Part shown: piece by piece, positions 3,842-51,027 of the stretch | Layout: the number at the start of each line of letters is the position of its first letter | How positions within the stretch are numbered: position 1 is the stretch's first letter | DNA from: Octopus sinensis | Taxonomy: Eukaryota | NCBI RefSeq assembly: GCF_006345805.1 | Contig: NC_043012.1 | Location: 33,852,001 to 33,916,000 of the forward strand | DNA length: 64,000 nt | Direction of reading: 5' to 3' | Position numbers and translations under genes: made by a program | The notes under the pieces: model-generated | Told to the model about the DNA's origin: nothing | What the model saw: only the letters and a program-made list of their open reading frames with translations | The model's database searches: none

Positions 3842-3960
3842 TTATCCAAGTTTTGGGGGAAGCAGGAAATTTTTTTTTTTTTATCCAAGTTTTGGGGGAA
3901 GCAGGAAATTTTTTTTTTTTTTATCCAAGTTTTGGGGGAAGTAGGAAATTTTTTTTTGTT
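3842..3960 (+). repeat. Tandem repeat, 3 x about 40 bp (ttatccaagttttgggggaagcaggaaa-T12)
   Basis: Three consecutive units read directly, 55 nt upstream of the 4015 acceptor. Confidence 0.9.
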
Positions 3961-4014
3961 TTTTTTATTTGCGTGTTTCATGTACTGGATTTTCTTTTTC
4001 TCTTGTTCTTTCAG

Positions 4015-4185
4015 ACACGCACTCTTTTTGTGAATGCGTTTATCACAAACAATCGTTCTGATTACATAACACACCTGATGGCTTACCATACAAAGTATCT
4101 AGAATGTTTTCTCAAGACTCAGAACCATTTAATGAGAGCTGATGGACCATTACCATTTGCATATAGACATTATATAGCTATAATG
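4015..4185 (+). CDS. SESN: Sestrin exon (first found): TRTLFVNAF...[15 protein letters not shown]
   Basis: ttctttcag acceptor, atg|gtaagt donor, 171 nt, phase 0/0. Confidence 0.95.
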
Positions 4186-7100
4186 GTAAGTATTTCTTCA
4201 TCATTTAATAAATCAAGACATTCTGAAAAAAAAAAAAAAATCATCTTTTTTCTTTATTTTTTCATTTTCTCTAAAGCATGAAAATCCTTGTTTTTAAATT
4301 CTCAGGTTCTGTTTGCTGGTCAACAGAAGCTGCTAAATAGATGCAGCACAGAATTTTCATCTCTTAAGTCAAGGGCTCAAATACTACTACCATCATTTGC
4401 TTGCAGGCTATTGTTGTAGTGTAATCCTAACTTCAGATGTTCCAGCTATGATCATCCTGTCCTTTAAAGTGTGTATGTGTGTGTGTGTGTGTGTAAGAAG
4501 GGTCTGTGAACCTTTTTGAAACAACTGCTGTAAACCCTTTATTTTTAATTAAGTGGCCTACTTCCCAACTGTGATTTCACGTTGCACAGCACCTTGGGCA
4601 AGTGTCTTCTATTAAAGCCCCAGGCAACAAGTGCAGTCTTATGGCTGGATTTGGTAAATGGAAACTGAATGAAGCTCATCTTGTATATGTATGTATGCAT
4701 ATATAGATATGTGTTTTTGTGTCCCCTTGTCTTGATATAAGTTAATGGTTGTAAAGGTTATTCATTTCCAACCTTCCATACAAAACCTATGTGGCCATGG
4801 AGAAAGGAAAGTATTACCTTTCTTGAAACCGGTTAGGGCTGGCAATGAGAAGGGCATCTGGCCATAGGAAATCTGCTTCAACAAATTCCATCTTGACTCA
4901 TACAAGCATGGAAAATTGAATTTTAAAACTTATGATGGTGGAAAGAATTGGCCAGCCCTGTGCAACTGTGCTGCTAGGATCATCTACAACAAATGCAGAA
5001 TTGAAAGCTGTCATTATCATCATCATCATCGTTTAACGTCCGCTTTCCATGCTAGCATGGGTTAGACGGTTTGATTGAGGGCTGGCGAACCAGGTTTCAA
5101 TCTTGATCTGGCAGAGTTTCATCCCTGTCGTATATATATTTCATATAACAAAGAACCTGCTAATGAAATGGTCCTAGTAACTTCAAGACACAAAACCTCA
5201 TTTCATCTCTTCATCACGCTATATATAAATCTGTTTGTGTAAGAAAAAGGAAATTCAACCATTTGGCTGCCAGATTTTTTTTTCAGAAAATATAGTTTTT
5301 CAATTAATAATTTATTAAATTTATGATTAAAATAAGGCTTCGTAAAGTCAGTCTAATGAACTTGTTTCTTCCGATGTAGGCTGCTGGTCGACACAAGTGT
5401 TCCTACCTCATTCAACTTCAAGCTACTGAGTTCCTCTTACAGAGCGGTAACGCCGATTGGTTGAAAGGGTTGGATTACATCCCACAGAAACTACGAGATC
5501 TTTATGAAATTAATAAATTGCTTGCCCATAGGCCATGGTTAATAAACAAATCACATATAGAAGTAAGTTTCAAATTTTGGAGTTTTTCCATTTTATTTTT
5601 TCACCTTTGGTTTCTCTTGAATCTTTCCTAGATTATTCTGCTGTTCCTCAACACGATTTTAACAATCCTATAAAGACAAAATACTGGAGGTGTGGAGAGT
5701 CAGTTTTTTTAGTTTTCTATTTTAATCATTTAAAATTTAAATAGCTAATAAGAAGAAGGATACTGTAAATTGAGAATCTATTTTTCTTGATTCACGAAAT
5801 TTTTATCAATTTAAATTTTCACACTGGAAAAAAAAAACACCAAAAAAGCACTCTCTTTCATTAATATAACCTTCACATAAAATTCAGTTCTTGGAATTTA
5901 TATTTCCACATATGCTACTAATATATTTTTAATAATGTACGACCATCACGACCCTTTCCTCACCTCTAGTGTTTGGTATCATATTAACCTAGAATTAGCA
6001 ATTAATTAAATTAATTAGGAAAGCCTTCATAGTATATTTATTTACTGTGGTGTATATGGTGTGTTTATAGATATATTTGGTATGGTGTGTTTATAAACTG
6101 TTGTGTTTGAGTTAAGTATTTTTATAGGTCTGCATGTAAACAGGCTTTTGTAGTCGGTATATAAAAAAGTGTTTAAATGAGTTTCTTTTCTCTTATTTCT
6201 ACTGTTCCCAACCAACCAGCTGCGACTAGTCGACTGGTTATCCTTGAAAATAGGCCACTGCTTCTTGTTAGCTTTTTTTTACTTTACACACAAACTACAA
6301 CAAATAGAATGCAAACATGTTTTTACAGTGGCAGCTTACACAGAATAAACTTTGCACATTTGTAACAATCTTTCTCTCCCTCTCGTGTAGCAGTATCTCT
6401 TTACCCCTCCTCCAACGTAGCAGCAACTTAACAGTTCCACATTCAATACGAACAAACAAATAAATAAGAAATATAAAAATGCTTTTGCTCTTTGAAAGTC
6501 AAAATGGTGGTATGGTTTCTGTGATATTCCTCTTTACAAATATTTCTCCGGATTATATTTTAGAGTCTTTTGGTATGAGGCCATAGATTTACCAAGGAAG
6601 TAGAGAGACCATTTCCCCAGTACATATCTAGAACTTACTTACAGTCCTGAACAAATGAATGACTTGTCATCGGTCTCCTTTGTTACTTCACTTGAATAAA
6701 TCTTGTCTCCGTTAAATATTAAATAGTTGGTTTGACGCTACATTAACTGAAGTGGAGAAATGTTTGTGCGTAATGTATGAGCATTTAACGTCCATGCTGG
6801 CATGGGTGGGACGGTTCAACAGGAACCAGCCAGGCAGAAGCCTGCATCGGACTTCTGTGACTGTTTTGGCAGGATTTTTACAGCTGGATGTCCTTCTTAG
6901 CACCAAGCAGAGTGGACTTATATATAATCAAGATCCTCATCATTTAACCCTTTCGTTGCTGTATTTATTGCTCTGTGTTTCTTTCAATTACTTTAAATAT
7001 AACAAGGGATTTAGTAAAATAACTTAGTTATCATTAAGCCAGTGTTAGGAACATAAATTCTGACTAAGGTTTGGTGGAAGATTTTAAATCAAAACTTATG

Positions 7101-10100: not shown

Positions 10101-13100
10101 CATGTGTTCCTTGTTCAGTTTGCATTTGATTTCCTTCTCAGTAGGGTTTGATCAAATAGGTTTGTGACTCCTACCCCATATGTATGGTCTTTGACCCGTG
10201 TCAGAAATCACTTTTATTAAAAAAAAAAAAAAAAAATAGACTGATAAGAAACTTAAATATTCCCTCAAAATGTCTTGAGTTGGCTGCAAAGGTGAAAGGT
10301 CAAAGATTCTTATTTCTGCATATGGTTTCTTAATAATTTTTTAGCCAGACATTTTCTGTTTTCCTAACTGGTTTAGCCAAAATGTTATTTTTCACAAAGA
10401 CCCAATATGTCATATTGTTGACAATAAATGCCACTAAAGATAACCGTGGTAGACTCTTCCCTGTCCAAGGAGAAAAAGTTCACAATTGGAATGAAGATTT
10501 GGACCATCAGTCTTCTCAGTGAGAGCTGGCCTGGTCTGGGAAGAAGGAGCTTCAAGATGGCCTTGCTGGTACATGCACCAGGCCCCATGAGGGCTCAAGA
10601 CATTTCCTGGCATTAAGTACAAGAGCAAAGAAGAGATTTATAGACACATTCTGCCCGTTTTCTACTATTGTTGTTCAATGTAGGGGAGACTTTACTGGCT
10701 GCTGCTATTGTGCTGAACAGCAGGCCATAATGGATGATCTAATTTGGAAACTTTTGCACCCTAATAGAGGCTGGAGACCCACTCAACTGCATTGATGGCA
10801 GTGGTAAATGCATGAATGGAACTGAGGTTCTACTAAAGCTAATAGGGGCCAGAGATTCTTGGTGTTGAATGGTGAAACATCTTGGTTGCAGCCACTTAAA
10901 GGAGAGAAGCTAACGGTTGTACAACTCCCCGTCCTGTCATATTATAGTCACTCATTCCTTGCATCCTTCCATATTACGACAAATGTTCTCAAACGTTGGG
11001 TATTGTGTTTATTTTGTTAGAATTGTTTTTCCCCAGCTAACATTGTTGGGTAGATTTGCAACACAGGAGCATTCCAACCATCTTGGCACATTTACAACAC
11101 AGCTACACATTATGCTGCTCTCTCATCTGTTGACAGTTTTAGCAGCACAGTTTCTGCTTTTCACTCCAAACATCTCTCTCTCTCTCTCTCTCTCAGCATA
11201 CACACATATAGATAGATAGTGCTGTGTGTTTTGTGTATGTTTATGTTCCCTCTTGTCTCATCTAGAATTACTGTATTTTTTGGTTCTCTCTTTCTTTAAT
11301 TCTTTTAGTAAGTACCTCAACAGAGAATCTCACTGCAAACAAATCAAACATACTACGCTATGTCTATGAACCAGACTACACATACCAAGACTTCAAACGT
11401 GTTAATTACCAAGAAGTAGCTACATTCCGAGCTCAGGATTACTCCTGGGAAGATCATGGGTTTTCATTAGCCAATCGTCTCTATCCAGAGATTGGAAGTC
11501 TATTGGACGAAAAATTCCGAGTGGCTTACAACCTTACTTATAATACGTAAGTAACCAACCAGATTTTCGATTTTATTTCCATATTTCATTTGGTTTTTAT
11601 TTTCTGTGGTTTTTAAAAGGTCGTTGGTAGTAATATGAACATACCCTTAAATATTTCTGTTAGACTTCTTAAGTCTGTCGGCTGCAAAATAGGATCTGGA
11701 TTGAAAGAATGTTGCACTCTGCTGTGTGCTACCAAGAATGGCAACTATTCAATTCTAAAAATATTTACTCCATTAATAAAAAGTTCTGTGATTTGTTGTC
11801 AGTTGACATACAAATAATGAAATGTTAATTTTAATGGAAATAATTAAAGGTTGTATTTGAACTGAAAATTAAAGTAAATACTGTAGAGAACTTTTAAAAA
11901 AAAAAATCATAAACTACCAATGTCATTGGTCCGGCAATACTTATTTGCACATTCTATAGCCTTGCATTGACCAGATGGAAACTTTGTGAAAGGCCATCAG
12001 ATTGTCTGTTCTTGTGATTGAAGAGCTCAGCCTTCCACACACTATTAAGACTGATTCTGTCAGAGTATTACATCACAGACACAATTATCTGTGGAATACT
12101 CAACCTTTTATGCAGTATTCCAATAAGTCATTGATTTAAGCAACTAGAATGAGGAAGGCCACACCTTGATGTGTGTGTGTGTAACTTTTAGATTTTATTT
12201 ATCAAAGTATCCAAGTAAAAATCTTGTCAAACATTTGAGTTAAAAAAATAGAAATGTTTAAAAGTGAGGTAAAATTATTCCAATTATTATGTTCTTGTAT
12301 AGTTTTCCTAATTCATCTTCCTAATGAATTCTTCTATATTTTTTTTTCTTTAGAATGGGTAACAACAAAGGTGTTGATACGACAGCTTTCCGGAGAGCCA
12401 TCTGGAACTACATCCACTTCATGTATGGCATCCGTCACGATGACTACAATTACAATGAAGTGACCGATCTACTAGAGAGAGACTTGAAAACCTATGTTAA
12501 AACTGTCACTTGTTATCCTGAGCAGGTTTCCTACCAAGATTACAAAAATGTTTTGAAAGGCTTTCAACATTCGGAAAAGGTAAGTAATGATTACCATTTA
12601 GAAAAACCTCCGTTCCACTTAATGGGAATCATTAGAATTAGAAATCATTAGCTTCTTCGCAATAAAACCTACTCTTTCGTGGTTCTCCCTGCTATCTTTG
12701 AAAGCAAATATTTGGTTTGAGCAGACTTACTCTTCTGTAGTCCTTGCAACTTTTAACCCTTTAGTGTTCGCATTATTCTGCCAAAATTAATCCTTTTTTT
12801 TATCCACATTGCCTTGAACTAATCAGGCATTAATCTTGGTGCTATGAGATTTTGATGAGGTAGCTGTTAATTTTTAAAACGATATTGTAGAGTTGGTGTG
12901 AAAGACCAGATCCGGCCAGTTTGAACATAAAACAGGCAGAATACTTTTGGCCGGTTTAAATGCTAAAGGGTTAACGCTGTTCCTTCCAATGAGGCGGCTA
13001 ATCTGCTTACATAATGATGAAAATGGAGAGATAGTACTGAGTGTTTTAGTAGATGAAAGACAAAGTGAAAAAACATTGCTCAGATTCCAGCCATTAGTTA

Positions 13101-13469
13101 AAAAGAATTATTATATATCTTACTTAACTTCAATCTTTATCAAAGGAGAGGACCAATTTGTTCAAGAATATATTTTACTTTCTCTTTCGGAATTCTTTCT
13201 TTTTGGGGTATTTTGTAAAAATGTAGAAGTAGCAATAGCTTTTTAAAGAATTACTAAATGAATTTTAGAATATTTTAACTAAAAAAAATCTTCAAGGGAC
13301 AGTTTTCATTTTTCAATTTTTATCCTTAATCTTATTTGTTTTAATTACAATTTAATTTTTTTTTTCTCTTCTTTTTACTTAGGTTCATGTCAATTTGATG
13401 ATGTTGGAAGCTCGTCTACAGGCAGAATTGTTATATTCTTTGCGGGCTGTAATGAGGTACATGACTTGA
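4015..13469 (+). CDS. SESN: Sestrin (PA26 family), 5'-incomplete; exons 4015-4185, 5380-5562, 8828-9052, 9891-10023, 11309-11546, 12354-12579, 13383-13469
   Basis: Manual splicing at AG/GT(AAGT) sites gives 1263 nt with consistent phases (0,0,0,1,2,0) and no internal stop. Motifs [25 protein letters not shown], [27 protein letters not shown], [15 protein letters not shown], GIRHDDY, HSEKVHVNL and [19 protein letters not shown] match sestrins. Confidence 0.97.
5380..5562 (+). CDS. SESN: Sestrin exon: [10 protein letters not shown]...[14 protein letters not shown]
   Basis: gatgtag acceptor, gaa|gtaagt donor, 183 nt; carries the catalytic Cys (tgt 5398-5400). Confidence 0.96.
6944..7164. mobile_element. 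piggyBac-type MITE family 1 (TTAA-CCCTTTCGTT...AACRAAAGGG-TTAA); copies at 20595-20812 (inverted) and 53681-53909
   Basis: TTAA at both ends, short TIRs and about 220 bp of shared internal sequence in three copies. Confidence 0.85.
8828..9052 (+). CDS. SESN: Sestrin exon: [13 protein letters not shown]...GCGIS...[10 protein letters not shown]
   Basis: tttccag acceptor, aat|gtaagt donor, 225 nt. Confidence 0.95.
9891..10023 (+). CDS. SESN: Sestrin exon: [19 protein letters not shown]...[13 protein letters not shown]
   Basis: ttcttaacag acceptor, t|gtaagt donor, 133 nt (phase 0/1). Confidence 0.93.
10385..10620 (-). mobile_element. Possible RTE AP-endonuclease remnant in a Sestrin intron
   Basis: Frameshifted VLSPHG.GACTS.GHL...WHLL resembles the RTE pattern GPHG.G.CN.NG.LL...WHLID. 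Confidence 0.35.
11309..11546 (+). CDS. SESN: Sestrin exon: ...[40 protein letters not shown]
   Basis: ttcttttag acceptor, ac|gtaagt donor, 238 nt (phase 1/2). Confidence 0.96.
12354..12579 (+). CDS. SESN: Sestrin exon: [21 protein letters not shown]...GIRHDDY...FQHSEK
   Basis: ttctttag acceptor, aag|gtaagt donor, 226 nt; overlaps ORF 12355..12651. Confidence 0.97.
12753..12974. mobile_element. piggyBac-type MITE family 2 (TTAA-CCCTTTAG...CTAAAGGG-TTAA); partial copies at about 51040-51229 and 20825-20890
   Basis: TTAA duplication and TIR; the internal gttttatgttcaaactggcc block is shared with 51050. Confidence 0.8.
13383..13469 (+). CDS. SESN: Sestrin last coding exon: [28 protein letters not shown]
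   Basis: ttttactttag-type pyrimidine tract with AG at 13381-82; TGA at 13467-69. Confidence 0.97.
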   Translation, partial: VHVNLMMLEARLQAELLYSLRAVMRYMT

Positions 13470-14275
13470 AGTGGGTACTGCTGACTGGTTCTGTCCGGTG
13501 TGCTAGTGGGTGCCTGCTGTCATAGAACTGTTAATATGGTATTTATGAAGAAGAGCCAAAATAAAAACCATATTTTATATATGTATATATTTGAAAGTGT
13601 GTGTGTCTATACATGTATACTGTATATATATGTGTATAATGTATAACATATGTGTATATGTTATATATATATATGTGTGTATAATGTATAACATATGTGT
13701 ATATGTTATATATATATATGTGTGTATAATGTATAACATATATGTGTATGATATATATATATGTGTGTAATATATATATATATATATATGTATTATACAT
13801 GTATATATATTATGTGTGTGTATGTATGTATATCTGTGTGTGTGTACGTATATATTTGAATATGTATATATATAATATATTACAGCAGCTAGAATTGTGA
13901 AGCAGCTGTGTCTGCAATTAAGCTCAGGGGACATAGAAATCAGAAATCAGAAAAGCTCTTCCTCCCTTGGATAAATCATCACAAATATGATGATGATGAT
14001 GATGATGATGTTGATGAATATATACCCACAGCATTATGTGAACATTTCTTTTTTAAAAATGGGCAAAAAATACATATATATTGACTGAAAAAAAATTGAA
14101 CTGAATTCCAAACCAAGACACACTCTCATACATATGAATGTATGCCTGTCTGTGTTAATGTGTATACATCTGTATAGCCTCACAGGTATGTGTATACATG
14201 TGTATAACCTTGGCTAACAACATTTAAATAGTTATATATGTAATATATATATACTTCTATGTTATATAAGGTGTG

Positions 14276-17300: not shown

Positions 17301-20300
17301 GGGTTAACAAGTGATATCTTGGGTTCTGTTGGCCTTTTGGACAGAGGCTGTTGTTTCTCAGAATTGAGTTGGTTTTTTTTCTCTTTTTATGCTAAATTTC
17401 TTTAATTCCTAATTACACCCACTTATAGCAAAGGTTTTAAAGAATGTTTTAGAGAAGTGGGAGTGATAGTTTATAAAATACTAAAATCTAATGCCAATCT
17501 TACTGGGTTTACATCCAAATTGACTAGAAACTTGGGAGAAGGGTCATTATTTACTTACAAAAAGCACAATTCTTGTTAAAAACAGCTACCTAGGGTTTCC
17601 TGTTTGAATTCTGATTTTTATTATATATATAATCATAGGTTAGCCTGTTAATATATCATCCCTTTTAATCAACTTGAAATGCCAAAAGAGTAAAATGTAA
17701 AAAATTCATTTGTTACTTAAATAAATGAAAACTATTCCTATAATAGCTAATTAGTAGTTTATTTATCAGATTGATTAGTAATTCTCATGAAACATGTGCT
17801 ATCATCCATCCTCTAGTCAAATTCTTCTGGCCCAAACTTTTTTTATTTATTATTTTCCTTTGTAAGACTATAATAGGATTTTATTTTTTTTTTGAGAATT
17901 CAGTGTCCATTCTTGTTGAATTCTATAATATGAATCCCACAGCACAAAAACTTACCTAATAACTAATGTCTTTCCTGTTGTATAAATATATGCAACACTT
18001 TATATAATACGTATGTATATACATGTGTAAATATATACACTTGTGAGTGTGTGTGTGTATGTATGTATGTATATATATATATGTACATATATACATACAC
18101 ACACACACACATTGTATGTATTGTATAATTTTTCCTGCATTTGTGATTTTTTTCTTACAATTGGTTTGGACGGACCGGACCATTCCTAATGTTTTTATTT
18201 TATTTTTTTATTTTTATCCCTTTTTTTTTTTTACTTGTTTTTTCTTACGACAAGGCTCCAGTCCAGAACTTGTAAATTTCTTTGAAAAACATATGTAATG
18301 TTTTAAGAGTTCTTACTTGATGAGAAAGAAACATAAATCTTGTGTTTTTACCATCATCATTATTATTATTATTATTATTTTTGACTTCAGTTATTTTGTA
18401 TTGTTCTTCCAAAACTTGTAGTTTAACTGAGAACTACTGAATTTTACCTCTCAAAGTTGGTGAAAAACTTTCGTTTCTTTCCTTTTATTTTATTTTTTTT
18501 TTACATTATTATATTATAATAATAATTATTATTGATAGTCTTACAGCTGTTTTTACCAAGTGCAGCTGTATAGTGATATCTTTTCAAGTAGAAATGTTTG
18601 TATGAAAGGTAGGTAGGAATGTATGTATGTCTGTGGCACCAAATTCTTTACAACATAAAACTGTAATCTGACTGATATTTTTTAAAAGAATTTCCGAAGA
18701 ATTTATTATTACTGATGATGATTATGATAGACTTAACAGTTGCATATACCAATACTCCAACAAAATACATTTATGTACTCCCACATGAGTTCCTTCTGTC
18801 AAAAAAAAAAAAAAAACTTGTTTAATCAACATGCACGATTTGAGAAGTGTGTGTGTTAAAGCAAACAAGGAAACTAATCAATATCTTAATGCCTCCCCCG
18901 TCACACATAACACACATTCACAGCAACTTTAAGATACCACCAGGAACTTGCCCCATCCTTCTCTAAGCTTTAAATTTATCATAATGTCCTTCACATTGTG
19001 GCAGACAAAGAAACTTTGTTCGCTAATCCTATGAGTCTCCAGTTGTAAATTGGAATATTCCTGGAGAAAAAGAACAGTTTGTTTACTTAACGGGGCTATA
19101 AATGAATCCAAAGACAGTTTTCAGTGACATTACAATAATCATATACTGCCGTACCCTCTCCCTTGACTGTAAAATGAGACAAAGCTGAAGTTTTACATTT
19201 CAACTATACCATGATTTATTAAATGTAACACACACACACAGATTGTTAGTATTGGTCGCAATTCTAACATGTAGCAGTGGTGTTTAGAGCTTTGTAAAAT
19301 CATGAGCTCCAGTTGCAATTTTGATTGCAATTGTCACAACCTCTGCTCTCTTTTGAAGTTTGTCACTTTGTCAGACAAAATATTGACAATGAACTTGACT
19401 TAACATGTATATAGGGTCAAAATTGAAGACAGTGTAAAATCTGGTCTAGATTCTCCAATTCCTTACTTGCAGTATAGGGCTTATCAGACTCTGGGAGCTG
19501 ACTACCTGTTCAGGTTTAAGAGTTCGTTTTCCTTGCCATTCAGTTTTTTATTTATATAAATATATATATATATATATTCGTTTTCTACTTCTTCCAATTA
19601 AAACCCCCAACAAATTGCTTGGTGATGCCATTTCATTGGGAACTGGTTTTTAGGGCAATATTACGCATCAAACACATCTGCCATTCTTTGTCCATTAAAA
19701 AATATATTCTCCCTCTCTTAATCTTCCTGACTTTCTCATTCTGGTGGCATTATTGAGCTGAAGCCTCCTACCCCATCCCAATATATATGTTGGTTGTGAT
19801 TTCTTGATTTTCTGACGATAATTAAATTAATTTATCAAAATAAAAAATAAAATATATATATATATATAAATCTTTAAAACCAAAATAAAGGGTTACTTTT
19901 AAGTTCTTGCAACAAATGCTAAAATAACAATGGCAACTTTGATAACTTAGATTTTCCTGATAAAGCCTTTGTTTAAGAGAAATTGATCTTCTCTTTAAAT
20001 TGGAACCACCTCAGTTGACAATAATAATTAGTAAAGACATTAGTAAATACTTCCAATTTTTAGCAAGTTGTACTTGATGGGGGGTGACAGGGTAGATTGA
20101 CTAATTGGGAAATTACAATTTTCTGGCTCCTCTTTTCCAGCTCTCAGTTCAGGTTTCTCATAAAAATGTACACCTTTAGCACCTCTCCTCTCTCTCTCTC
20201 TCCTCTGTCTCTTAATTATTGCCATTATTGCTTGACTCTCTCTGAACAAGTGCCACTTCACTTTGTTTTAACAAGGTGAAGCAGACAAGACAGATTGATA

Positions 20301-22390: not shown

Positions 22391-23049
22391 TATATATATC
22401 TTGTCTTAACTTCTTTCAGTCACTGGATTGCAGCCATGCTGAGGCACCGCATTGAAGGGCTTAAGTTGAATGTATCAACCAGAGTACTTATTTTTTTTAA
22501 AGCCTGATACTCAATTTATTGGTCTCTTTTTGCCAAATTGTTAAGTTATGGGACATAAGCTATCACTATTTGTCAAGTGATGGTGGTGGTGGTGGGGGAC
22601 AGATGTTATGACTCCTACATAGAGATATGTACATGTATGACAGCTTCCTTCATTTTCTATCTACCAAATCCACTCACAAGGCTTTTGTTGGAACAGGGCT
22701 ATAGTGGAAAACACTTGCCAAAGGTGTCACACTGTGGAACTAAACCTGGGACTACAAAGGACAACGAAACCTATAGAAAATAAGTCGGTGCTCCTGCATG
22801 GTCACAGTCCTATGACTGGAACAAAAGAATAAAAGAATTAACTTCATGGCCATGCCCATTGTCTATTTGGCTGAGCCTGTGGCATTAAGCTTTTATTTGC
22901 AACAAGGTTCAATCCCACTGTACGGCACACTTCTCCTTTGGTTTGACTTTAAAGTTGTCTTGTTTTTTTTATTTTTTTGTAGGAGATGGGTTTCCTTTGT
23001 TTGACTCAGTGAGGCTGATTACATCCTATTATGATGAATATACATTGAT

Positions 23050-23587
23050 GGTCTCACCAAGGCAATGACTAGTGACCGAGACCTTTGGAAGTATGCTGTG
23101 CATGAGAAGACCCGGCAGGACAAGTGAGACCATAACCCGTGGCCTCTACCTGGGATGTAGCCAGTCCACTTATGCATACCTTTCTTCTTGGGACACAAAA
23201 CTCTGCTTGCGAAGACCTGTTGAGGCAAGTGAAATCAAAATCAAAATCGATCAAAAATTTATGGAAATCGTAGTTGTAATACCAGTGCCGGTGGCACGTA
23301 AAAGAACCATCTAAACGTGGCCATTGCCAGCGCTGCCTCGACTGGCCTCTGTGCTGGTGGCACATAAAAAGCACCAACCAATCATGGCCGTTGCGAGCCT
23401 CGCCTGGCGCGTAAAAAGCATCCACTACACTCACGGAGTGGTCAGCGTTAGGAAGGACATCCAGCTGTAGAAACACTGCCAGATCAGACTGGGCCTGGTG
23501 CAGCCTCCTGGCTTCCCAGACCCCGGTCGAACCATCCAACCCATGCTAGCATGGAAAGCAGACGTTAAACAATAAGGATGATGATGT
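23050..23587 (+). mobile_element. RTE 3' end: ORF C-terminus AMTSDRDLWKYAVHEKTRQDK*, long 3' UTR, (GAT)n tail
   Basis: Colinear with 62508-63081; ends ccatgctagcatggaaagc.gacgttaaac..gatgatg. Confidence 0.85.
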
Positions 23588-24604
23588 ATATGTAATAAAA
23601 AAAATAGAAGGCACATCTATTCTCAATGACACTGAAGTAATGAGTGCACCAGCCTGTTAGTTCAACCACCCACTCTAAAATTATGAAACAGCTGTGTAAC
23701 AAAAAGGAAGGCAGGGAGAAATAGCGTTCACTTTGTTCAACAAACAACTGTTACAAGGTCACTCAACTTGCTAAAAATAGAAGTCAAAACTCACAAATCA
23801 GTCTGCTACCTTAAATAATACAGCTTTGGATATGCAACAGCTTTCATTAGAGTTGTCTTCAACTCAGACTGATCTGGGACAACACAACATCCACTTTCAC
23901 TTGAAGCCATCCAAAAAATGCCTCTACACAGGTGTACAACCTTTTAGAAGTAGCAGCCAAATTTCACTGAAAGCACAATGGACTCCTTTATATATAACTA
24001 CTACATGTATATATACCTCTAATCATTGCATGTATATACATGTAACGCATCCATAAGTCATATGTAAAAACGACCCCCTTTGGTCACAAATATCTAGAAA
24101 GTTCTCCGAGGCACAAGTTGAAACAAGGTTGTTTGTGGAAAACCAGTAGTTGCCCATGCATACCAGTTTCCCCTTTCCACACCACTGGTGTTATCCAAGA
24201 GAAAGGCAAAGGTCAATACAGCTTAGCACCAGTGACATCACAACTCATTTCTACAGTTGAGTGAAGCAGAGCAACATAAAATAAAGTGTCTTGCTTAAGA
24301 ACATAACACACAGCCCAGTCTGAGAATCTAAATCACAGACTTATGATAGTAAGTCTGACACTCTAACGACTGAGCTACCTTCACTATAAATCACATCTTT
24401 AGCACTAATTACTAGAATAAATCATAATCTTTAGCACTAATTACTAGAATATCTAATGTGTAGTTTGAAATGAGGCTTACATTTCACATTGGGACCTATT
24501 TCCATTCTTTTAGAGGTTTGACTACTAACCAGCCAGAGAATTTATTTTTTTATTTCATCTAGTTTCAGCTCATGAGCTGTGGCCATGCTGGGGCACTGCC
24601 ATTT

Positions 24605-24712
24605 AAAAAAATATGAACCGCTTCAAGAATTTGCATGTCATCCTTGCGCAGGGCCATGCTAATCTTCTCTGAATCGTTCCAATTTTAGAATATGTGCCGC
24701 TGTAACTAGTAC
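24605..24712 (-). pseudogene. U6: U6 snRNA full-length retrocopy (degenerate)
   Basis: Minus strand reads GTACTAGTTACAGCGGCACATATTCTAAAATTGGAACGATTCAGAGAAGATTAGCATGGCCCTGCGCAAGGATGACATGCAAATTCTTGAAGCGGTTCATATTTTTTT, colinear with U6. ACAGAGA box is changed to TCAGAGA, one C is missing in the ISL, the 5' stem is broken and there is no TATA at -30. Confidence 0.93.
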
Positions 24713-25519
24713 AATTTCTTCACTTACAAGAAATAGCAGTCAATTTCTTCCTCATTGAATCATACCAAGGACACATTAAATAATGTGATGTTGCTAGATT
24801 CACAAGATCCAGAAACAGGGCCCTAAGCATTTAAAAGATTTTGGTGCCCTCATAAAAGATTATTTAATTAAAAAAAAATAACAACAAACCATGAAAAAAA
24901 TTTTTATTTTTCAAAACAAAACAAAACAGTAAGAGGGAAAATAATGTTTATTTTTGTCTCCTTCCACTTAATTTATATTTGAAAAGTTCCCTCTTACTTT
25001 GATTACATCCTCAAAATTAATGTTAGATAACACATCTGCATCTATATACCTAATAAGGATAAAAGAATCCCAAATATTATTTTAGCAAGTTTAAAGTAAT
25101 TTCTTTTGTGCCATCAACCATTTACCATTTCTGTGGTTCCCCCCTCCTTTCCTTTATGCCCTAAGTACATGCTTATTTTGCTCAATGGTTAATCCAATGC
25201 TGTCCAGAAAATAAACAGGCTGGTTATTGGTTGGAACCCTTTAGCTCAATGTTTCTCAACCATTTTTCAGTCATGGACCCCTTTCATTCCTATTTTACTT
25301 GGGTGGACAATTGTAATCCATTTTATGTTTAAAAAATCCTATTATATTTTTAGTCCAGCCCAAACAGTAAAGTCCAGCCCACCACTCTGTAAAGTGGTTG
25401 GCATTGGGAAGAGCATCCAGCTCTAAAAAAACCATGCCAAAACATACACAAAGGTCTGGTGCAGGCTCCTGCTTGGTCAGTTCCTATGAAACCATCCAGC
25501 CCATGGAAGATGGATGTAA

Positions 25520-33545: not shown

Positions 33546-34182
33546 AAATTATATATACATGCATATATGGGTAAAGGACGTCACCAACGGTGTAAATAAA
33601 ACTTGAAATAGTAATTGTATGTGTGTGTGTGTGTGTATGTACATATATATACATACATGTAAATACACATATAGATATTTATATGTATGTGTGTATGTGT
33701 GTGTGTACAGTATTTGCCGGTGTATAAGCCACACCCATCTATAAACCGCAACCCCAATTTAAGGTACGGTAATGAAATTCCAGCTGGATTTGGTTGATGG
33801 AAACTGAAAGAAGCCCGTCGTATATATATAAATATATATATATACATGTGTGTGTGTTTGTGTATGTTTGTCCTCCCAAGATTGCTTGACAATCGATGTT
33901 GGTGTATTTATGTCCCCACAACTTAGTGGTTCAACAAAAGAGACCGATAGAATAAGCACTAGGCTACTAGAGAATAAGTCCTGAGGTCGATTTGCTTGAC
34001 TAAGGAGGCGGTACTCCATCATAGCCACAGTCAAATGAATGAAACAAGTAAAATAATATATATATACACACACACATATATGTATTACATACATATGTAT
34101 ATATATATATATGTGTGTGTGTGTATGTATATACACACATATAGATAGATAGATACACAGGAGCTAGCTTAAAAGCTGCCCT

Positions 34183-35981: not shown

Positions 35982-36451
35982 GGGAGAGATAGAGAGAGAG
36001 ATTGATTGAACAGATTGGAATGTAAAATAGATAGAGTATGACATGTATGACAATGAAAAATGTCTCTGTGATTTGGTTTTTCACTGCAGTTTGTCATGGA
36101 GAAAAATTCTTGCTTAAGACAAAATAGGATCGAAGTATCATAGTCAGCTTAGGATGCATTCTTTTGAACTGATGGATGCATTTCAAAGTCTTTGGCACCA
36201 GATACCAAAGAGAGGCAACTCTGACTAGGAAACAAAGGTTCCTTTATAAGAAATCGGTCTATATCATTAGCTTCAACTATATCTCAGGCATATTTGAACG
36301 GGTGTTAACTTTGTTAGCTTTCAGTCACTGCTTTGCACACCTAGTAATGAATTTGTTCTGGCCTGGCAGCCAATATGTGCCATCAGCCAATAATATTGGT
36401 TTCAAATTTTGGTACAAAGTGCCTTGGCTCCTCGGCCCTTGTATACTGCAT

Positions 36452-36925
36452 AATCATCATCATCATTGTTTAACGTCCGTTTCCCATGATAGCATGGGCT
36501 GGACGGTTCGACCGGGATCTGGGAAGCCAGAAGGCTGCACCAGGCCCAGTCTGATCTGGCAGTGTACAGCTGGATGCCCTTCCTAATGCCAACCACTCCG
36601 TGAGTGTAGTGGGTGCTTTTTACGTGCCACCGGCACAAGTGCCAGGGGAGGCTGGCAGCGGCCACGATCGGTTGGTGCTTTTTACGTGCTACCGGCACAG
36701 AAGCCAGTCAAGGCGGCGCTGGCATCGGCCACGTTCAGGTGGTGCTTTTTACGTGCCACCGGCACAGGTATCACAACTACGATTTCCATTGATTTTTGAT
36801 GTTGATGTACTTGACTCAATAGGTCTCCTCAAGCACAGAGTCGAGACGGTGTTTCTTTACTTGCCACCTACACAGGAGTCAATCCAGCGGCACTGGCAAC
36901 TGCCGGGTGCCAGTCATAGAATTGG
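36452..36925 (-). mobile_element. RTE 3' UTR copy; further copies at about 3069-3320(-), 5014-5122(-), 6782-6905(-), 25375-25680(+), 28122-28385(-), 30298-30450(-), 37258-37330(-), 39033-39277(+), 43030-43362(+), 43535-43678(-), 55068-55187(+), 57590-57742(+), 63390-63750(-), 63800-64000(+)
   Basis: Shared catcatcatcgtttaacgtccgctttccatgctagcatgggttggacgg... consensus. Confidence 0.9.
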
Positions 36926-38665: not shown

Positions 38666-39292
38666 TGAGAGAGAGAGAGAGGAGGGTGTCTTTTCTTATC
38701 TGGATTTTTGTAAAAGCAACATATTACAATTATAAAAAAAAAATTCAGGTTTCAAAACAAGAAACACCAAAAGAACCGGAGAACTTCCATACATGCCAAA
38801 CTGGACTGAAAGGAAAAAACTAATAATAATAATGATGCTGATGATGATGATGATTTCTTTTATTTGTTACAAGGGTAAAGGATGAGGTGGGGAACAATAA
38901 ATACTGAGGCAGACATAAAATCTGGTTATTTATATAGAACAGAATCTAAGTATATAGGTGTAGACATGTAGACATGGCTGTTTGGCAAGAAGGATACTTC
39001 CCAAGGCATAGTTCTAGGTTCAGCTCCCACTGTGTGGCACGTAAAAAGCACCAACCGATCGTGGCCATTGCCAGCCTCCCCTGGCACCTGTGCTGGTGGC
39101 ACGTAAAAAGCACCCACTACACTCACGGAGTGGTTGATGTTAGGAAGGGCATCCAGCTGTAGAAACACTGCCAGATCAGACTGGAGCCTGGTGCAGCCTC
39201 CAGGCTTCCCAGACACCAGTCGAACCATCTAACCCATGCCAGCATGGAAAGCGGACGTTAAACGATGATGATGATGATATATACATACATAC

Positions 39293-40020
39293 ATGGGAGT
39301 CGCCAAAAGAAACCGGAATTTTGCAATATTATTTTATTCACTTGGTTTTACATGTTTACACTTTGACCACCTTCAGAATATTCTCCATTTGAAGCAACAC
39401 ATCAGTCCAGATGCGTTTTCCCCTATTCAAAGCAATGCAGGAATTCTTGCAAAGTGATGCCTTTTAATGCCTCTGAGCATTTTCTTCACTTCTCCCACAT
39501 CTTCAAATTCCATAGCACCAGCTTTTATCACCTGTGATGACCTTCAAAAAATGGTTCGGATCAACTTCCAGCAATTCCTTCAGTTTGCAACATGCATTCA
39601 GTCAAGATTGCTTTTGATCTTCTGTGAGCAAGCAAGGCACAAATTTTACTGCAACTATTTTTTTTCTCATTTGCAATTCCTCACTCAGAATTCATTGGCA
39701 GGTGCTCCAGAACACGCCAGCCATACCAACATGTTTGTTAATTGTTTGGTGATAATCCTCCAAGACCAGTTCATGTATTTTCATGTTTTCATTGGTTCAG
39801 GCGGTCAACAGTAACCTTGAATGAGGTTAGTCTTCAAGAAATAACTGACCATTCCTAAAGCATGGAAACCACTCATAAACTTGTTTTGCTCATGGCAGTT
39901 TCCTTGTAAGCTGTTTGAAGTAGGACAACTGTTTTCATTGCCATTTTCCCCAGAAGAAAACAGAATTTCATGGTAACACACTGTTCTTTCGTTTCAGCCC
40001 ATTTTCAGCATTTATTGTAC
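39293..40020 (-). mobile_element. Internally deleted mariner element
   Basis: Minus strand: KEQCVTMKFCFLLGK...QVYEWF...VITGDKSWCYG joined directly to FEDVGEVKK...ALKGITLQEF...CVASNGEYSEG. Confidence 0.85.
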
Positions 40021-40640: not shown

Positions 40641-40899
40641 TGATGACAACAACGATGATGACGACGACAGTGATGACAATGATGATGATGATGCATATCT
40701 ATATAGAAATGTATTTTTTAAAAAGTACAATAAAGTACAATTATTAAAAAGAGAATATATATATATTTTTTAACTAAGACATAAAAGATTTTTCCAGGCT
40801 AGGCTGTGTTTAGGGCTCTCCATGACCCATTCACTTAAACAGTTCTCAAATTCTGATTGAGTGCAATTGAACTGAGGAATCTAATGTTGAAAAAAAAAA

Positions 40900-41690
40900 G
40901 GTATTCCACTTGAAGGTATTCCACTCTACCTCCTGTGTGCCCCATAGCTTACATTGGGCATAGCATATGGAGTTTACATCCGTTCCTTTTCCACATACAG
41001 AACACGACCATTTTCCTAACAACACCAAGATTCTGTCTTCTTTTCTACTCATTAACAACTGAATCTTTACCAAGTGTATCTTGGGGCTTCTCGGTTCTAG
41101 GTTTAGCTTCCATGCCTGGAATTTCCCTTTTAATTTCTCTATGGATTCAGTTATGTGAAATAAATCCGTAGTTTGCATGGACAGCTTGTCTTAAGCTCTT
41201 CTGTGATGGCTTGCAGGATAGGAATGAATAGAAGAGAGCTGAATACTGAGCCTTTGAGAATTCATGGAAGAAGTCCATCTGTCCTTCTGCAACGGCGCTT
41301 GTGGTGCTTTGGCCATGCATGTAGGCGTCCGGTGGGTGAACTGAGTCATGATGTCCTTCTCCCAACTCCACTTCCCAACTGGCGGAAGCGCGTGGGCAGG
41401 CAGCTGAAGACCTGGGCTACGATGATCAAGGAGGACCTCTCTGTGCTCACGGGTCTGCAGGTGGACGGCCTGCGCGGATGGAACCGTGACTGGCTCGCTA
41501 TCTCCAATGAACTGGTGCAGGACCGTCGTGCGTGGGCTGCCATGGTTCGAGACGCCTCGAGGGTGATAGAAGAAGCCGACTCAACCCGCCCAGGGTGAAT
41601 GTCACCACAAGTAAAAGTACAAGTAAGAATACTGAGCCTTAACAGACCCTTGCATTCACATTGAATTTGTAGCTGAAATCCTTTTTGATT
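40900..41690 (-). mobile_element. Second RTE-clade RT fragment, interrupted by a nested LINE
   Basis: ORF 40846..41178 (KFQAWKLNLE...GKWSCSVCGKG); the frame continues across the insertion as ARVC*GSVFSSLLFIPILQAITEELKTSCP. Confidence 0.8.
41255..41626 (+). mobile_element. 5'-truncated RTE LINE 3' end with 14-bp TSD
   Basis: RRLWCFGHACRR...WRKRVGRQLKTW...DRRAWAAMVRDA...STRPG*, then a caagtaaaagtacaagta tail; TSD gaatactgagcctt at 41241-41254 and 41627-41640. Confidence 0.9.
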
Positions 41691-42531
41691 CATAATTTAC
41701 TTACTGCATCTTTGTTCATTGCTTACACATTCCTTACAAGCCATGTGTCTACACCTAGTATCCTTATATATGAGTACATATTCTTTTGTTTGAGAACAAT
41801 AAACCTTACAAGAATCTGTTTCAATATATATTGTGTCTTATCAAAGGTCAGAAGTAAAGAGATTCTGGAAATTAACAGCATTTATACAAAAGTTTAAAAA
41901 CTAGAATACAATACTAATGCAATGTTATACACACACACACACAAACCATTTTAAATTGGTAAAAAAGAGAAAAATTATAAATGCATTGTATGAAAGAGAA
42001 AACTATTTGAGGAGGGGACTTTTCATACAGAAATTCTATCTGGATTATTATGAAATTAATAGTACATAGTTAAATTCAAGGAGCAATTTTTTTTTTTGGT
42101 TGATAGTTATAAGTGGAACATTCCAAACAATTAAACAACCTCCATTTATAAATTATTTATAATCACAGAAAGAAAAAAATATCAGGAGAAAATAACAGAC
42201 AAATGAATATTGGTAATCAATCAAATTGCCCTGATGAGGGGGTATGAAAACAGACCAATGGATAGATTAACAGACAGATATATTTAATTATTAAATATAT
42301 TACATTACAAAATTAAAGTTTACAAATAATGAATCCTCCTCAATGTAGAAGGATTAGATATTTTGGATAAGGTGTAGGTGTGGCTGTGGGGTAAAAAGCT
42401 TGCTTCCAACAACATGGTTCCAGGTTCAGTCTTGCTGCTTGGTCAAGTATCTTCCACTATCGTCCCAGGCCAATCAAAGCCTTGTGAATGGATTTGGTAA
42501 AAGAAGTTTGTCGTGTGCATGTGTGTGTGTT

Positions 42532-42570
<39 letters not shown>

Positions 42571-43814
42571 TGTGTGTGTGTGTGTCTTTGTGTTTGTCCA
42601 GCCAGTACCACTTGACAACCAGTGTTGGTATGTCTATGGTCTATGTCCATGTAACTTAGCAGTTCAGCAAAAAAAGACTGATAAAACAAATACCAGGCTT
42701 AATGAAATGTAAGTACTGGGATTAATTCATTCAACTAAAAATTCTTCAAGGCAGTGCCCCAGCATGGCCACAGTCTAATGACTGAAATAAGTGAAAGAAA
42801 AAGATAAAAGAAAGAAGGTAAAACATCTTTTGGCAGTCATAAGGCAACATTGGGTTTGACTTGAAACAGGCCAGGATAAAGATGACCAGAGTATCGTGAA
42901 TTGCTTTCTGGTACATTTCTGTTGTAAAATAAAATAAATTTATAACTGAGTCAAATGGAAAAGGATGGCATTGTTGCTCTTTCTTAGGGTCTCGAACTAG
43001 TGGAGGAACAAAAAAAAATTTTTTTTTAAATCAAATGGAAATTGTAGTTGTGATACCAGTGCCGGTGGCACGTAAAAGAACCATCTGAACCTGGCTGTAG
43101 CCAGCGCCGCCTCGACTGGCCTCAATGCCGGTGGCATGTAAAAAGCACCAACTGATCATGGCCGTTGCCAGCCTCCCCTGGCACGTAAAAAGCACCCACT
43201 ACACTCATGGAGTGGTTGGTATTAGGAAGGGCATCCAGCTGTAGAAACACTGCCAGATCAGACTGGAGCCTGGTGCAGCCTCCTGGCTTCCCAGGCCCCG
43301 GTTGGACCGTCCAACCCATGCTAGCATGGAAAGCGGATGTTAAACGATGATGATGATGATGATAAGAAAGGCAATATACCAAGATAATGAGTTATCTTCA
43401 GTTCTGAAATTTGTTTCTAACACTTGTAACAGCAGTGCTGGCTTTCAAGATCCTGCTCCGGGCCTCTTCATCAATGTTAACGGTTCCCAATAGAGTATTG
43501 TGATGTTGAGCAATCTGTCAACTGCTTGTGGTTATCATCATCGTTTAATGTCCGTTTTCCATACTAGCATGGGTTGGACGGTTCGACCGGGGTCTGGGAA
43601 GCCAGGGGCTGCACCGGGCTCCAGTCTGATCTGGCAGTGTTTCTACAGCTGGATGCCCTTCCTAACGCCAACCACTCCTTCAATTTCTGCAATTTCAACC
43701 AATCAATGACGTCTATTGATGTTAAAACATTCTGTGCCGTATGAATATGTCCCTCGTTTAAGAAACAGATTGGGTTTATTTACATTTCTGAAAAAAAAAA
43801 GTTACCCTCCCCCA

Positions 43815-50669: not shown

Positions 50670-51027
50670 GGCGTAGGAGTGGCTGTGTGGTAAGTAGCTT
50701 GCTTACTGACCACATGGTTCAGGGTTCAGTCCCACTACGTGGCACCTTGGGCAAGTGTCTTCTACTATAGCCTCGGCTTGACCAAAGCCTTGTGAGTGGA
50801 TTTGGTAGACGGAAACTGAAAGAAGCCCGTCATATATATGTGTCTGTGTTTGTCCTCCCAACATTGCTTGACAACCGATGCTTGTGTGTTTACGTTCCCG
50901 TAACTTAGCAGTTCGGCAAAAGAGACCGATAGAATAAGTACTAGGCTTACAAAGAATAAGTCCTGGGGTCGATTTACTCGACTAAAGGTGGTGCTCCACT
51001 GACTGAAACAAGTAAAAGAGTAAAAGA
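50670..51027 (+). mobile_element. tRNA-derived SINE family B (CORE-like centre); other copies at about 4560-4800, 22440-22800(-), 27200-27480(-), 33775-34050, 42371-42810, 56450-56665, 56925-57200, 57755-58110, 59990-60170(-), 60644-61018, 61670-61820
   Basis: ggcgtaggagtggctgtgtggtaag...ggttcagtcccact.cgtggcaccttgggcaagtgtcttc...cagcatggcc.cagtc.aatgactgaaacaagtaaaag. Confidence 0.9.

What the first reader, a model, noticed from the sequence alone, without database searches (positions are those of the whole stretch)
24541..24712. U6 snRNA copy fused in-sense to a retroposon 3' tail: candidate U6/retroelement chimeric retrogene
Seen: on the minus strand a full-length U6 ending in T7 is followed directly by AAAT-GGCAGTGCCCCAGCATGGCCACAGCTCATGAGCTGAAACTAGATGAAATAAAAAAATAAA. 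This matches the 3' terminal segment of SINE family B (compare 42748 ggcagtgccccagcatggccacagtc) and ends in an A-rich tail. There is no TATA upstream and the ACAGAGA box is mutated. Established: U6/L1 chimeras in mammals have this layout (complete U6 5', retroelement 3' end) and are attributed to RtcB ligation or template switching. Inference: an analogous route may operate here with a non-L1 (probably RTE-type) machinery. Only a 5-bp aattt is available as a possible TSD, so independent adjacent insertions are not excluded.
Basis: partly seen in the sequence, partly recalled or inferred. Interest (0 to 1): 0.75.

Follow-up and report, generated by a model that had tools for sequence, protein, structure and literature searches.

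The report
U6 pseudogene fused to SINE tail
A dead, full-length copy of the U6 spliceosomal RNA is joined head-to-tail to the last 60 bases of a common SINE; this is most likely a by-product of retrotransposition of a kind already described in vertebrates, and it cannot be proven from this one locus.

Summary
On the minus strand, 24712-24605 is a complete U6 snRNA copy (Rfam U6, 92.4 bits, model 1-105) ending in T7. AAAT follows, then the 3'-terminal 60 nt of an abundant SINE ('family B', 8 copies in the window), in the same orientation and running to its A-rich end (24541). The U6 is a pseudogene: ACAGAGA reads TCAGAGA, the 5' stem-loop is broken, one base is deleted, and it is about 88% identical to canonical U6.

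The other seven SINE-B copies keep their body, so only this one is tail-only. The U6 5' flank shows no SINE body, which excludes a nested insertion. Chance adjacency is about 4x10^-4 per U6 copy.

The best reading is one retrotransposition event: a LINE reverse transcriptase started on SINE RNA and switched to U6 RNA, or U6 and SINE RNA were ligated beforehand.

This is not proven. The candidate target-site duplication is only 5 bp exact or 8 bp with one mismatch (p about 0.12). An equally good 5-bp repeat (TAAAT) flanks the SINE tail alone, so two separate insertions remain possible. The RTE partner is only weakly supported.

No related genome was reachable, so recurrence and empty sites are untested. 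U6 chimeras with L2, RTE and SINE partners are already published (Doucet 2015). This is a new member of a known kind and of modest interest.

The parts
24605..24712 (-). Full-length U6 snRNA pseudogene, including its 3' T7 run (24611-24605)
   Evidence: Rfam RF00026 scores 92.4 bits over model 1-105 of 105. There are 94 matches, 12 mismatches and 1 deletion against canonical U6. ACAGAGA reads TCAGAGA and the 5' stem-loop has non-canonical pairs.
24601..24604 (-). Junction nucleotides AAAT between the U6 T run and the aligned SINE tail. Their origin is ambiguous: untemplated, SINE-derived (other copies read ..TTCAA|GG or ..CTAAA|GG here), or a target-site copy.
   Evidence: Read directly. The alignment with other SINE-B copies puts TTTTTTTAAAT opposite AATTCTTCAA.
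24541..24600 (-). 3'-terminal 60 nt of SINE family B, in the same orientation as the U6, 5'-truncated at about position 376 of a roughly 434-nt element, ending in an A-rich tail
   Evidence: Exact 24-mer shared with 42750-42773, with 0 matches in shuffles. Blastn gives 87% identity over 61 columns. Multiple alignment with 7 other tails.
24713..24720 (-). Candidate 5' target-site duplication AAGAAATT, directly abutting U6 G1
   Evidence: It matches AATAAATT at 24546-24539 (7 of 8; exact core AAATT). About 12% of shuffled flanks or random window 30-mers score as well, so this is not significant.
24539..24546 (-). Candidate 3' target-site duplication AATAAATT, overlapping the end of the A-rich tail
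   Evidence: The overlapping TAAAT (24544-24540) also repeats the TAAAT at 24605-24601, which would serve as a duplication for the SINE tail alone.
42375..42830 (+). Reference full-length copy of SINE family B: Pol III A/B-box-like head, internal (TG)n, and the same tail subfamily as the chimera
   Evidence: The other copies lie at 22397-22721(-), about 33900-34060, 50674-51010, 56480-56663, 57826-58109 and 60646-61011. All of them have SINE body upstream of the tail.
41173..41632 (+). 5'-truncated RTE-like LINE: the C-terminal 141 codons of its ORF plus a very short 3' UTR ending in ACAAGTAAAAGTACAAGTAAG. It is a possible autonomous partner of the SINE, with weak support.
   Evidence: ORF. 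Homologues at 58-71% identity lie on ENA contigs and have the same short ..GGGTGAA..ACAAGT.. ends. Pfam finds nothing in this C-terminal piece. Similarity of this end to the SINE tails gives p 0.03-0.09.

Best explanation
This is a dead-on-arrival chimeric retropseudogene made in one retrotransposition event.

Shown: a complete U6 copy starts exactly at U6 nucleotide 1 and ends in T7. It is joined, with at most 4 ambiguous bases, to the last 60 nt of a SINE in the same orientation, and that SINE part runs to its own A-rich 3' terminus. The U6 part is non-functional. It has no recognisable upstream TATA, and no SINE body lies on its 5' side.

Inferred: the reverse transcriptase of the LINE that mobilises this SINE nicked the target and began copying a SINE RNA from its 3' tail. 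After about 60 nt it switched template to the 3' oligo-U end of a U6 snRNA and copied it to its capped 5' end. The run of T/A bases at the junction (TTCTTCAA in the SINE against U-rich U6) would allow microhomology. Alternatively, U6 and a cleaved SINE RNA were ligated first by an RtcB-type ligase, and the chimeric RNA was recognised through the SINE tail.

The product was integrated with a short A/T-rich target-site duplication (AAATT to AAGAAATT). It has since decayed by roughly 10%. The internal T7 is a Pol III terminator, so the copy cannot propagate itself.
For: 1. The full-length U6 has an exact 5' end and a T7 3' end. Genomic human U6/L1 chimeras carry a full-length U6 ending in 5-7 T joined to a 5'-truncated element (PMC6789731).

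2. The tail is the true 3' end of SINE-B, in sense orientation, and it is the only tail-only copy among 8 in the window.

3. The chance that a same-strand SINE-B fragment starts within 5 bp of a given point is 3.75e-4. With all repeat families (about 40 fragments per 64 kb) it is roughly 2e-3.

4. The 300 nt 5' of the U6 show no similarity to the SINE body (p 0.14 and 0.48). U6 therefore did not insert into a full SINE.

5. The flanks are unique in the window, so this is not part of a larger duplicated block.

6. Precedent: U6 chimeras with L2, RTE, Mon-1 and AnolisSINE2 have short duplications of 1-9 bp for stringent LINEs. In those clades chimeras are the only form of U6 pseudogene (PMC4476161).

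7. A 3'-truncated U6 fragment flanked by a 17-nt direct repeat lies in a related genome (L004). This shows that U6 RNA is a retro-insertion substrate in this animal group.
Against: The candidate target-site duplication is short, A/T-rich and not significant (p about 0.12).

The same motif gives equally good 5-bp repeats for 'SINE tail alone' (TAAAT). Once the tail is removed, it also does so for 'U6 alone' (AAATT).

There is only one U6 in the window, so recurrence is untested. No orthologous or paralogous empty site could be obtained.

T7/AAAT is an A/T-rich site of the kind many LINE endonucleases prefer, which raises the odds of an independent insertion there.

The species' own U6 gene and promoter are unknown. 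'No promoter' and 'about 10% decay' are therefore judged against a vertebrate or Rfam consensus.
Confidence: 0.65

Rival explanations
1. Two independent events. A U6 copy (a solo retro-insertion or a decayed DNA-level gene copy) was already there, ending ...CATATTTTTTT/AAATTCTCTGG. A 5'-truncated SINE-B then inserted at the T7/AAAT site and duplicated TAAAT.
For: TAAAT flanks the 60-nt tail on both sides, and AAATT would flank the U6 once the tail is removed. The duplication for the whole composite is no better than this. T-run/A sites are common LINE endonuclease targets (general knowledge of L1-type endonucleases). In this window the element density is high: 8 SINE-B and at least 15 copies of another family in 64 kb.
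Against: It needs a coincidence of about 4e-4 to 2e-3 per U6 copy, even if raised about tenfold by site preference. It also needs an extreme 5' truncation that none of the other 7 SINE-B copies shows. A solo U6 retrocopy without an A tail or LINE tail is not expected from stringent LINEs (PMC4476161). No TATA is seen where a gene copy should have one.
Confidence: 0.25
2. The unit is one copy of an amplifying, SINE-like repeat family with a U6-derived head and a SINE/LINE tail. This would be analogous to SINEU elements, or to what automated annotation calls SINE/U or SINE/U-L1.
For: The layout of small-RNA head plus LINE-recognised tail is that of a SINE. An Octopus vulgaris repeat annotation lists one 'U' family (369 kb) and one 'U-L1' family (52.7 kb) among SINEs (PMC13282606). 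SINEs with snRNA heads exist (PMC4494074).
Against: The T7 between head and tail is a Pol III terminator, so a U6-promoted transcript would not include the tail. Animal U6 promoters are upstream and are not carried along. The window holds only one copy. That the window comes from an octopus is my recollection of the SINE sequence and was not tested. The make-up of the 'U' and 'U-L1' families is not given in the paper.
Confidence: 0.07
3. It is a functional or recently functional U6 gene that happens to lie next to a SINE fragment.
For: It is full length, with a proper oligo-T terminator, and the AGC triad and most of the core are intact.
Against: The catalytic ACAGAGA box reads TCAGAGA. The 5' stem-loop has non-canonical pairs, and one C is deleted in GGCCCC. 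In all there are 12 mismatches and 1 deletion against canonical U6. No TATA is seen upstream.
Confidence: 0.02

Closest known systems
U6 chimeras with stringent (non-L1) LINEs and their SINEs: platypus U6-L2 and U6-Mon-1, Anolis U6-L2, U6-RTEX-2 and U6-AnolisSINE2 (Doucet et al. 2015, PMC4476161)
   Same: A sense U6 lies 5' of a short 3' piece of a LINE or of the SINE that LINE mobilises. Target-site duplications are short or absent (1-9 bp in platypus). There is no poly(A)-only form. The published attribution is to template switching during target-primed reverse transcription.
   Different: Those cases are vertebrate, and each has several to dozens of copies with different junctions. In platypus nearly all U6 parts are 5'-truncated, whereas here the U6 is complete. 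Here there is a single copy in an unidentified, probably molluscan, genome, and the LINE partner has not been pinned down.
Mammalian U6/L1 chimeric pseudogenes (Buzdin 2002; Garcia-Perez 2007; Moldovan 2019, PMC6789731)
   Same: A full-length U6 ending in 5-7 T is joined to a variably 5'-truncated retroelement 3' end in the same orientation.
   Different: The L1 chimeras end in poly(A), have duplications of 6-19 bp and sit at L1 endonuclease consensus sites. Here the partner is a SINE tail ending in an A-rich simple sequence and the duplication is at most 8 bp. RtcB ligation has been shown only in human cells.
SINEU: SINEs with U1- or U2-derived heads (Kojima 2015, PMC4494074)
   Same: An snRNA-derived 5' part lies in front of a retroposon tail. 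Template switching to an snRNA is proposed as the founding event.
   Different: SINEU families are amplifying multi-copy families with shared junctions, and their heads come from U1 or U2, not U6. Here an internal T7 terminator and the single copy argue for a one-off by-product.

Membership tests
U6/retroelement chimeric retropseudogene | Complete or 5'-complete U6 in sense orientation at the 5' end of the composite | tested here: met
   Rfam U6 model positions 1-105 of 105, not truncated, 92.4 bits
U6/retroelement chimeric retropseudogene | The U6 oligo-T end is joined directly to a 5'-truncated retroelement in the same orientation, and that element reaches its own 3' terminus | tested here: met
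   T7, then AAAT, then SINE-B positions about 376-434, ending in the A-rich tail
U6/retroelement chimeric retropseudogene | A target-site duplication flanks the whole composite and not its parts | tested here: inconclusive
   AAATT exact, or AAGAAATT/AATAAATT at 7 of 8, with p about 0.12. TAAAT equally flanks the tail alone.
U6/retroelement chimeric retropseudogene | No U6 promoter (PSE, TATA) upstream, meaning an RNA-derived copy | tested here: inconclusive
   No TATA-like box at -20 to -35 by reading. The species' own PSE and real U6 flanks are unknown.
U6/retroelement chimeric retropseudogene | Both parts arrived at the same time (empty orthologous site lacking both) | not testable with these tools
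   No close relative was found in any collection. The flanks have no paralogue in the window.
U6/retroelement chimeric retropseudogene | Recurrence: several copies in the genome with different junction points | not testable with these tools
   Only one U6 in 64 kb. About 110 kb of a related genome lacks this SINE and holds only one truncated U6 fragment.
SINE with snRNA-derived head (SINEU-like) | A transcription unit that spans head and tail, with no internal terminator | tested here: not met
   T7 lies between the U6 and the tail. Four or more T terminate Pol III (general knowledge).
SINE with snRNA-derived head (SINEU-like) | A multi-copy family sharing one junction | not testable with these tools
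   Single copy in the window. The genome is not available.
Functional U6 snRNA gene | Intact ACAGAGA box, 5' stem-loop and internal stem-loop | tested here: not met
   TCAGAGA, non-canonical pairs in the 5' stem, a 1-nt deletion in GGCCCC, and 13 differences in 107 positions
RTE-mobilised SINE (applies to the partner element) | The SINE 3' tail is homologous to the 3' end of an RTE-clade LINE of the same genome | tested here: inconclusive
   The shared 11-mer ACAAGTAAAAG gives local alignment p 0.028-0.09 for three SINE-B tails and 0.78 for the chimera's own tail. The LINE's clade was not formally assigned: Pfam finds nothing in the C-terminal fragment.

The most novel reading that the evidence does not exclude
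In this invertebrate genome (probably a cephalopod), U6 snRNA is captured again and again by the SINE/LINE retrotransposition machinery. The result would be a population of U6-SINE-tail composites with varied junctions, possibly what automated annotation of Octopus vulgaris files under SINE 'U' or 'U-L1'. That would extend U6 chimera formation from vertebrates to lophotrochozoans. It would also offer snapshots of how a small RNA acquires a LINE-recognised tail, the proposed first step in the birth of a SINE.
Probability: 0.3. Interest if true: 0.5.

Novelty: new member of a known kind. Interest (0 to 1): 0.3.

Why it matters
If this is a single-event chimera, it shows that template switching or RNA ligation onto U6 also operates with the retrotransposition machinery of a non-vertebrate animal whose genome is dominated by SINEs and stringent LINEs. 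It would support the view that this is a general property of non-LTR reverse transcription and the route by which small RNAs acquire LINE tails.

The mechanism and the non-L1 and SINE-partner variants are already published for platypus and lizard. One decayed copy with an ambiguous target-site duplication therefore adds little on its own. Its value is as a pointer to a cheap genome-wide survey.

Tried and rejected
1. A search of the metagenome collection for U6-core...SINE-tail (GCGCAAGGATGACA N30-60 CAGCATGGCC) gave one hit, L003. It is GC-rich, has no U6 by Rfam, and is a chance match.

2. The SINE tail pattern found nothing in genome contigs or viral contigs.

3. An exact look-up of the window's sestrin exon ORF to find the source or sister assemblies found nothing on record. 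The best protein relatives are only 76% identical, on short Logan contigs, and only the exons align. Orthologous non-coding DNA is therefore out of reach.

4. About 110 kb of a related genome (ENA ERZ21867824, L004-L009) was fetched through homologues of the RTE-like ORF. It holds no SINE-B and no U6 chimera, only one truncated U6 fragment.

5. Nested insertion of U6 into a complete SINE is rejected: the 5' flank has no SINE-body similarity.

6. A search for paralogous copies of the flanks in the window, to serve as a surrogate empty site, found none.

7. I considered an ORF trick, searching junction-spanning peptides in the protein collection. I dropped it because the frame is closed in canonical U6 and the species is absent from the collection. 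One protein search was left unused.

8. Dating the two parts against each other did not work. The sequences are too short (107 and 60 nt) and the species' own U6 and SINE subfamily consensus are unknown.

Full report
WHAT IS THERE

On the minus strand, cmscan at Rfam gathering thresholds finds exactly one RNA family hit in the 64-kb window. It is U6 spliceosomal RNA at 24712..24607, scoring 92.4 bits (cut-off 44) with E 1.8e-22. It covers model positions 1-105 of 105 and is not truncated. A permissive scan (E<=1) and a blastn with canonical U6 at word size 7 find no second U6 or fragment. Everything else in the permissive scan is microsatellite noise hitting miRNA models.

The copy starts at the canonical G1 and ends in seven T (24611-24605). 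Against canonical U6 it has 94 matches, 12 mismatches and one deletion. Among these changes, ACAGAGA reads TCAGAGA, the 5' stem-loop has non-canonical pairs, and one C is lost from GGCCCC. It is a pseudogene.

A U6 fragment from a related genome shares two of the 'mutations': A at position 6 and G at position 15. Part of the apparent decay may therefore be lineage-specific sequence, and roughly 10% divergence is a fair estimate. No TATA-like box is visible 20-35 nt upstream. The species' own U6 promoter is unknown, so this is weak evidence.

THE 3' PARTNER

Four bases (AAAT, 24604-24601) follow the T7.

- The first 24 nt recur exactly at 42750-42773, with 0 matches in 100 shuffles.
- Blastn aligns the 60 nt to positions 376-434 of the full copy at 42375-42830, at 87% identity.
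- A MAFFT alignment places them column for column on the tails of seven other copies, down to the ...ATGACTGAAAC/TAAG...A-rich terminus.

The window holds eight tails of this family. Seven have SINE body immediately upstream, and the U6-linked one is the only tail-only copy.

The junction cannot be placed to the base. Where the chimera reads TTTTTTTAAAT|GGCAGTG, the closest SINE copies read AATTCTTCAA|GGCAGTG or CTAAA|GGCGGTG. Some of the AAAT, and even the last T, could be SINE-derived, and there is room for U/A microhomology.

ONE EVENT OR TWO

For one event:

- The chance that a same-strand SINE-B fragment begins within 5 bp of a given point is 3.75e-4 at the density seen in this window. 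Allowing any repeat family (about 40 fragments per 64 kb), it is about 2e-3.
- The 300 nt 5' of the U6 have no similarity to the SINE body (p 0.14 and 0.48 against shuffles). U6 did not land inside a complete SINE.
- The flanks are unique in the window.
- The layout matches published chimeras. Genomic human U6/L1 chimeras carry a full-length U6 ending in 5-7 T joined to a variably 5'-truncated element (PMC6789731). For 'stringent' LINE clades, U6 pseudogenes occur only as chimeras, with short duplications (PMC4476161).

Against certainty:

- The best target-site duplication for the composite is AAATT (exact), or AAGAAATT/AATAAATT (7 of 8). About 12% of shuffled flanks or random window 30-mers do as well.
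- The same A/T motif gives TAAAT on both sides of the tail alone. After conceptual removal of the tail, it gives AAATT on both sides of the U6 alone.
- T7/AAAT is also the sort of site a LINE endonuclease might favour.

I weigh this as about 0.65 for a single chimeric insertion and about 0.25 for two independent events. Small remainders go to a U6-headed repeat family and to a real gene.

MECHANISM (INFERRED)

A LINE reverse transcriptase primed on nicked target DNA and began on a SINE-B RNA recognised through its 3' tail. It copied about 60 nt, switched to the 3' oligo-U end of a U6 snRNA and ran to its 5' end.

The alternative is that a U6 3' end was ligated to a cleaved SINE RNA (RtcB-type ligation, shown in human cells), and the hybrid RNA was then reverse-transcribed through the SINE tail. 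The DNA product is the same, and the ambiguous 4-nt junction does not discriminate between the two.

The internal T7 would stop Pol III, and animal U6 promoters are external. The copy is therefore an evolutionary dead end, not a new SINE.

WHICH LINE

At 41173-41598 (+) there is a 141-codon C-terminal fragment of a LINE ORF, followed by a very short 3' UTR ending in ACAAGTAAAAGTACAAGTAAG. Its homologues, at 58-71% identity and all on contigs of one ENA assembly (ERZ21867824), end the same way in two cases.

The motif pattern of this C-terminus and the ultra-short 3' UTR ending in short repeats resemble RTE-clade elements. That is my recollection and is not a test. Pfam finds nothing in this fragment.

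Some SINE-B tails share ACAAGTAAAAG with this end. Local alignment gives only p 0.028-0.09, and 0.78 for the chimera's own decayed tail. The RTE partnership is therefore plausible and unproven.

CONTEXT AND ORGANISM

The window carries sestrin exons on the plus strand. Pfam PA26 positions 20-79 fall at about 4.0-4.2 kb and positions 344-419 at 12355-12583. The last coding exon is at about 13328-13470, by alignment to a relative's contig. The chimera therefore lies antisense, about 11 kb downstream of that gene.

The SINE-B sequence looks to me like the abundant octopus SINE. This is recollection only and no tool confirmed the organism. The nearest sestrin exon in the protein collection is 76% identical.

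If it is an octopus, a recent O. vulgaris repeat annotation is relevant. It lists SINEs at 11.6% of the genome, active RTE, Dong-R4, CR1 and L1-Tx1 LINEs, and one 'U' and one 'U-L1' SINE family of unstated composition (PMC13282606). That is a lead for the genome-wide survey.

COMPARISON WITH WHAT IS KNOWN

U6/L1 chimeras are classic (Buzdin 2002; Garcia-Perez 2007; reviewed). Doucet et al. 2015 extended them in two species:

- Platypus: 40 U6-L2 or U6-Mon-1 copies, with duplications of 1-9 bp.
- Anolis: 3 chimeras each with L1, L2 and RTEX-2, plus 6 with AnolisSINE2.

They concluded that template switching to U6 is a general property of non-LTR retrotransposons, and chimeric retrogenes from a fungal LINE are also known (PMC2104539, listed). 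My literature searches found no report from molluscs, but the library is limited to open-access papers.

The locus is thus a probable new member of a known kind, in a new host group, represented by one old copy.

LIMITS

No collection available here contains the source genome or a close relative. They remain the decisive steps.

Noticed in passing
L004:11953-12025 (ENA ERZ21867824, contig ctg91653l): A related genome holds a 3'-truncated U6 fragment (about nt 1/6-46...CAGCTTCGGCGGTACATATACTAAAATTGGAACGATACAGA). It is flanked by a 17-nt direct repeat ACAGATGGA(G/T)GTAAATA, and the downstream copy of that repeat overlaps U6's ACAGA. This looks like an internally primed U6 retro-insertion with a clear target-site duplication and microhomology. 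It scores below Rfam gathering and was found by blastn.
   Followed up: partly
window 3853-4281, 12355-12583, 13328-13470 (+): Exons of a sestrin (PA26) gene. Pfam PF04636 positions 20-79 and 344-419 are matched, and the last coding exon was found by alignment to a relative's contig. The U6 chimera lies antisense, about 11 kb downstream of the stop codon.
   Followed up: partly
window 41173-41632 (+) and 40846-41178 (-): A 5'-truncated RTE-like LINE 3' end has a 3' UTR of only about 35 nt ending in ACAAGTAA-type repeats. Abutting it is an antisense ORF containing a C-x2-C...C-x2-C motif (SVCGKGTDVNSICYAQCKLW), probably a fragment of another retroelement.
   Followed up: partly
window 24386-24451 and about 24290-24400 (-): Just 3' of the chimera lies a 32-bp unit duplicated 2.1 times (94% match). 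Next to it is a tRNA-like head, GGTAGCTCAGTCGTTAGAGTGTCAGACTTACTATCATAAG..., with no other full copy in the window. ARAGORN calls no tRNA.
   Followed up: partly
window, e.g. 23291-23590, 36447-36689, 38850-39300, 43179-43364, 63389-63999: A second, even more abundant interspersed repeat family has at least 15 fragments at 80-93% identity. It produces the recurring spurious ORFs (…SDLAVFLQLD…, …ARSDWAWCSLLASQ…) in the ORF list.
   Followed up: partly
window 42515-42585 and other SINE-B copies; 18040-18110, 34056-34160 and others: SINE-B carries an internal (TG)n microsatellite of variable length. (TG)n and (TA)n tracts across the window account for about 100 sub-threshold hits to mir-297, mir-466 and mir-3149 in the permissive Rfam scan. 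These are artefacts.
   Followed up: yes
literature (PMC13282606, Table 1 and supplementary table): An Octopus vulgaris repeat annotation lists SINE classes 'U' (1 family, 369 kb) and 'U-L1' (1 family, 52.7 kb; its 2 'recently active' copies total 353 bp, about 176 bp each). That length is close to this 172-bp composite. The composition of these families is not given.
   Followed up: no
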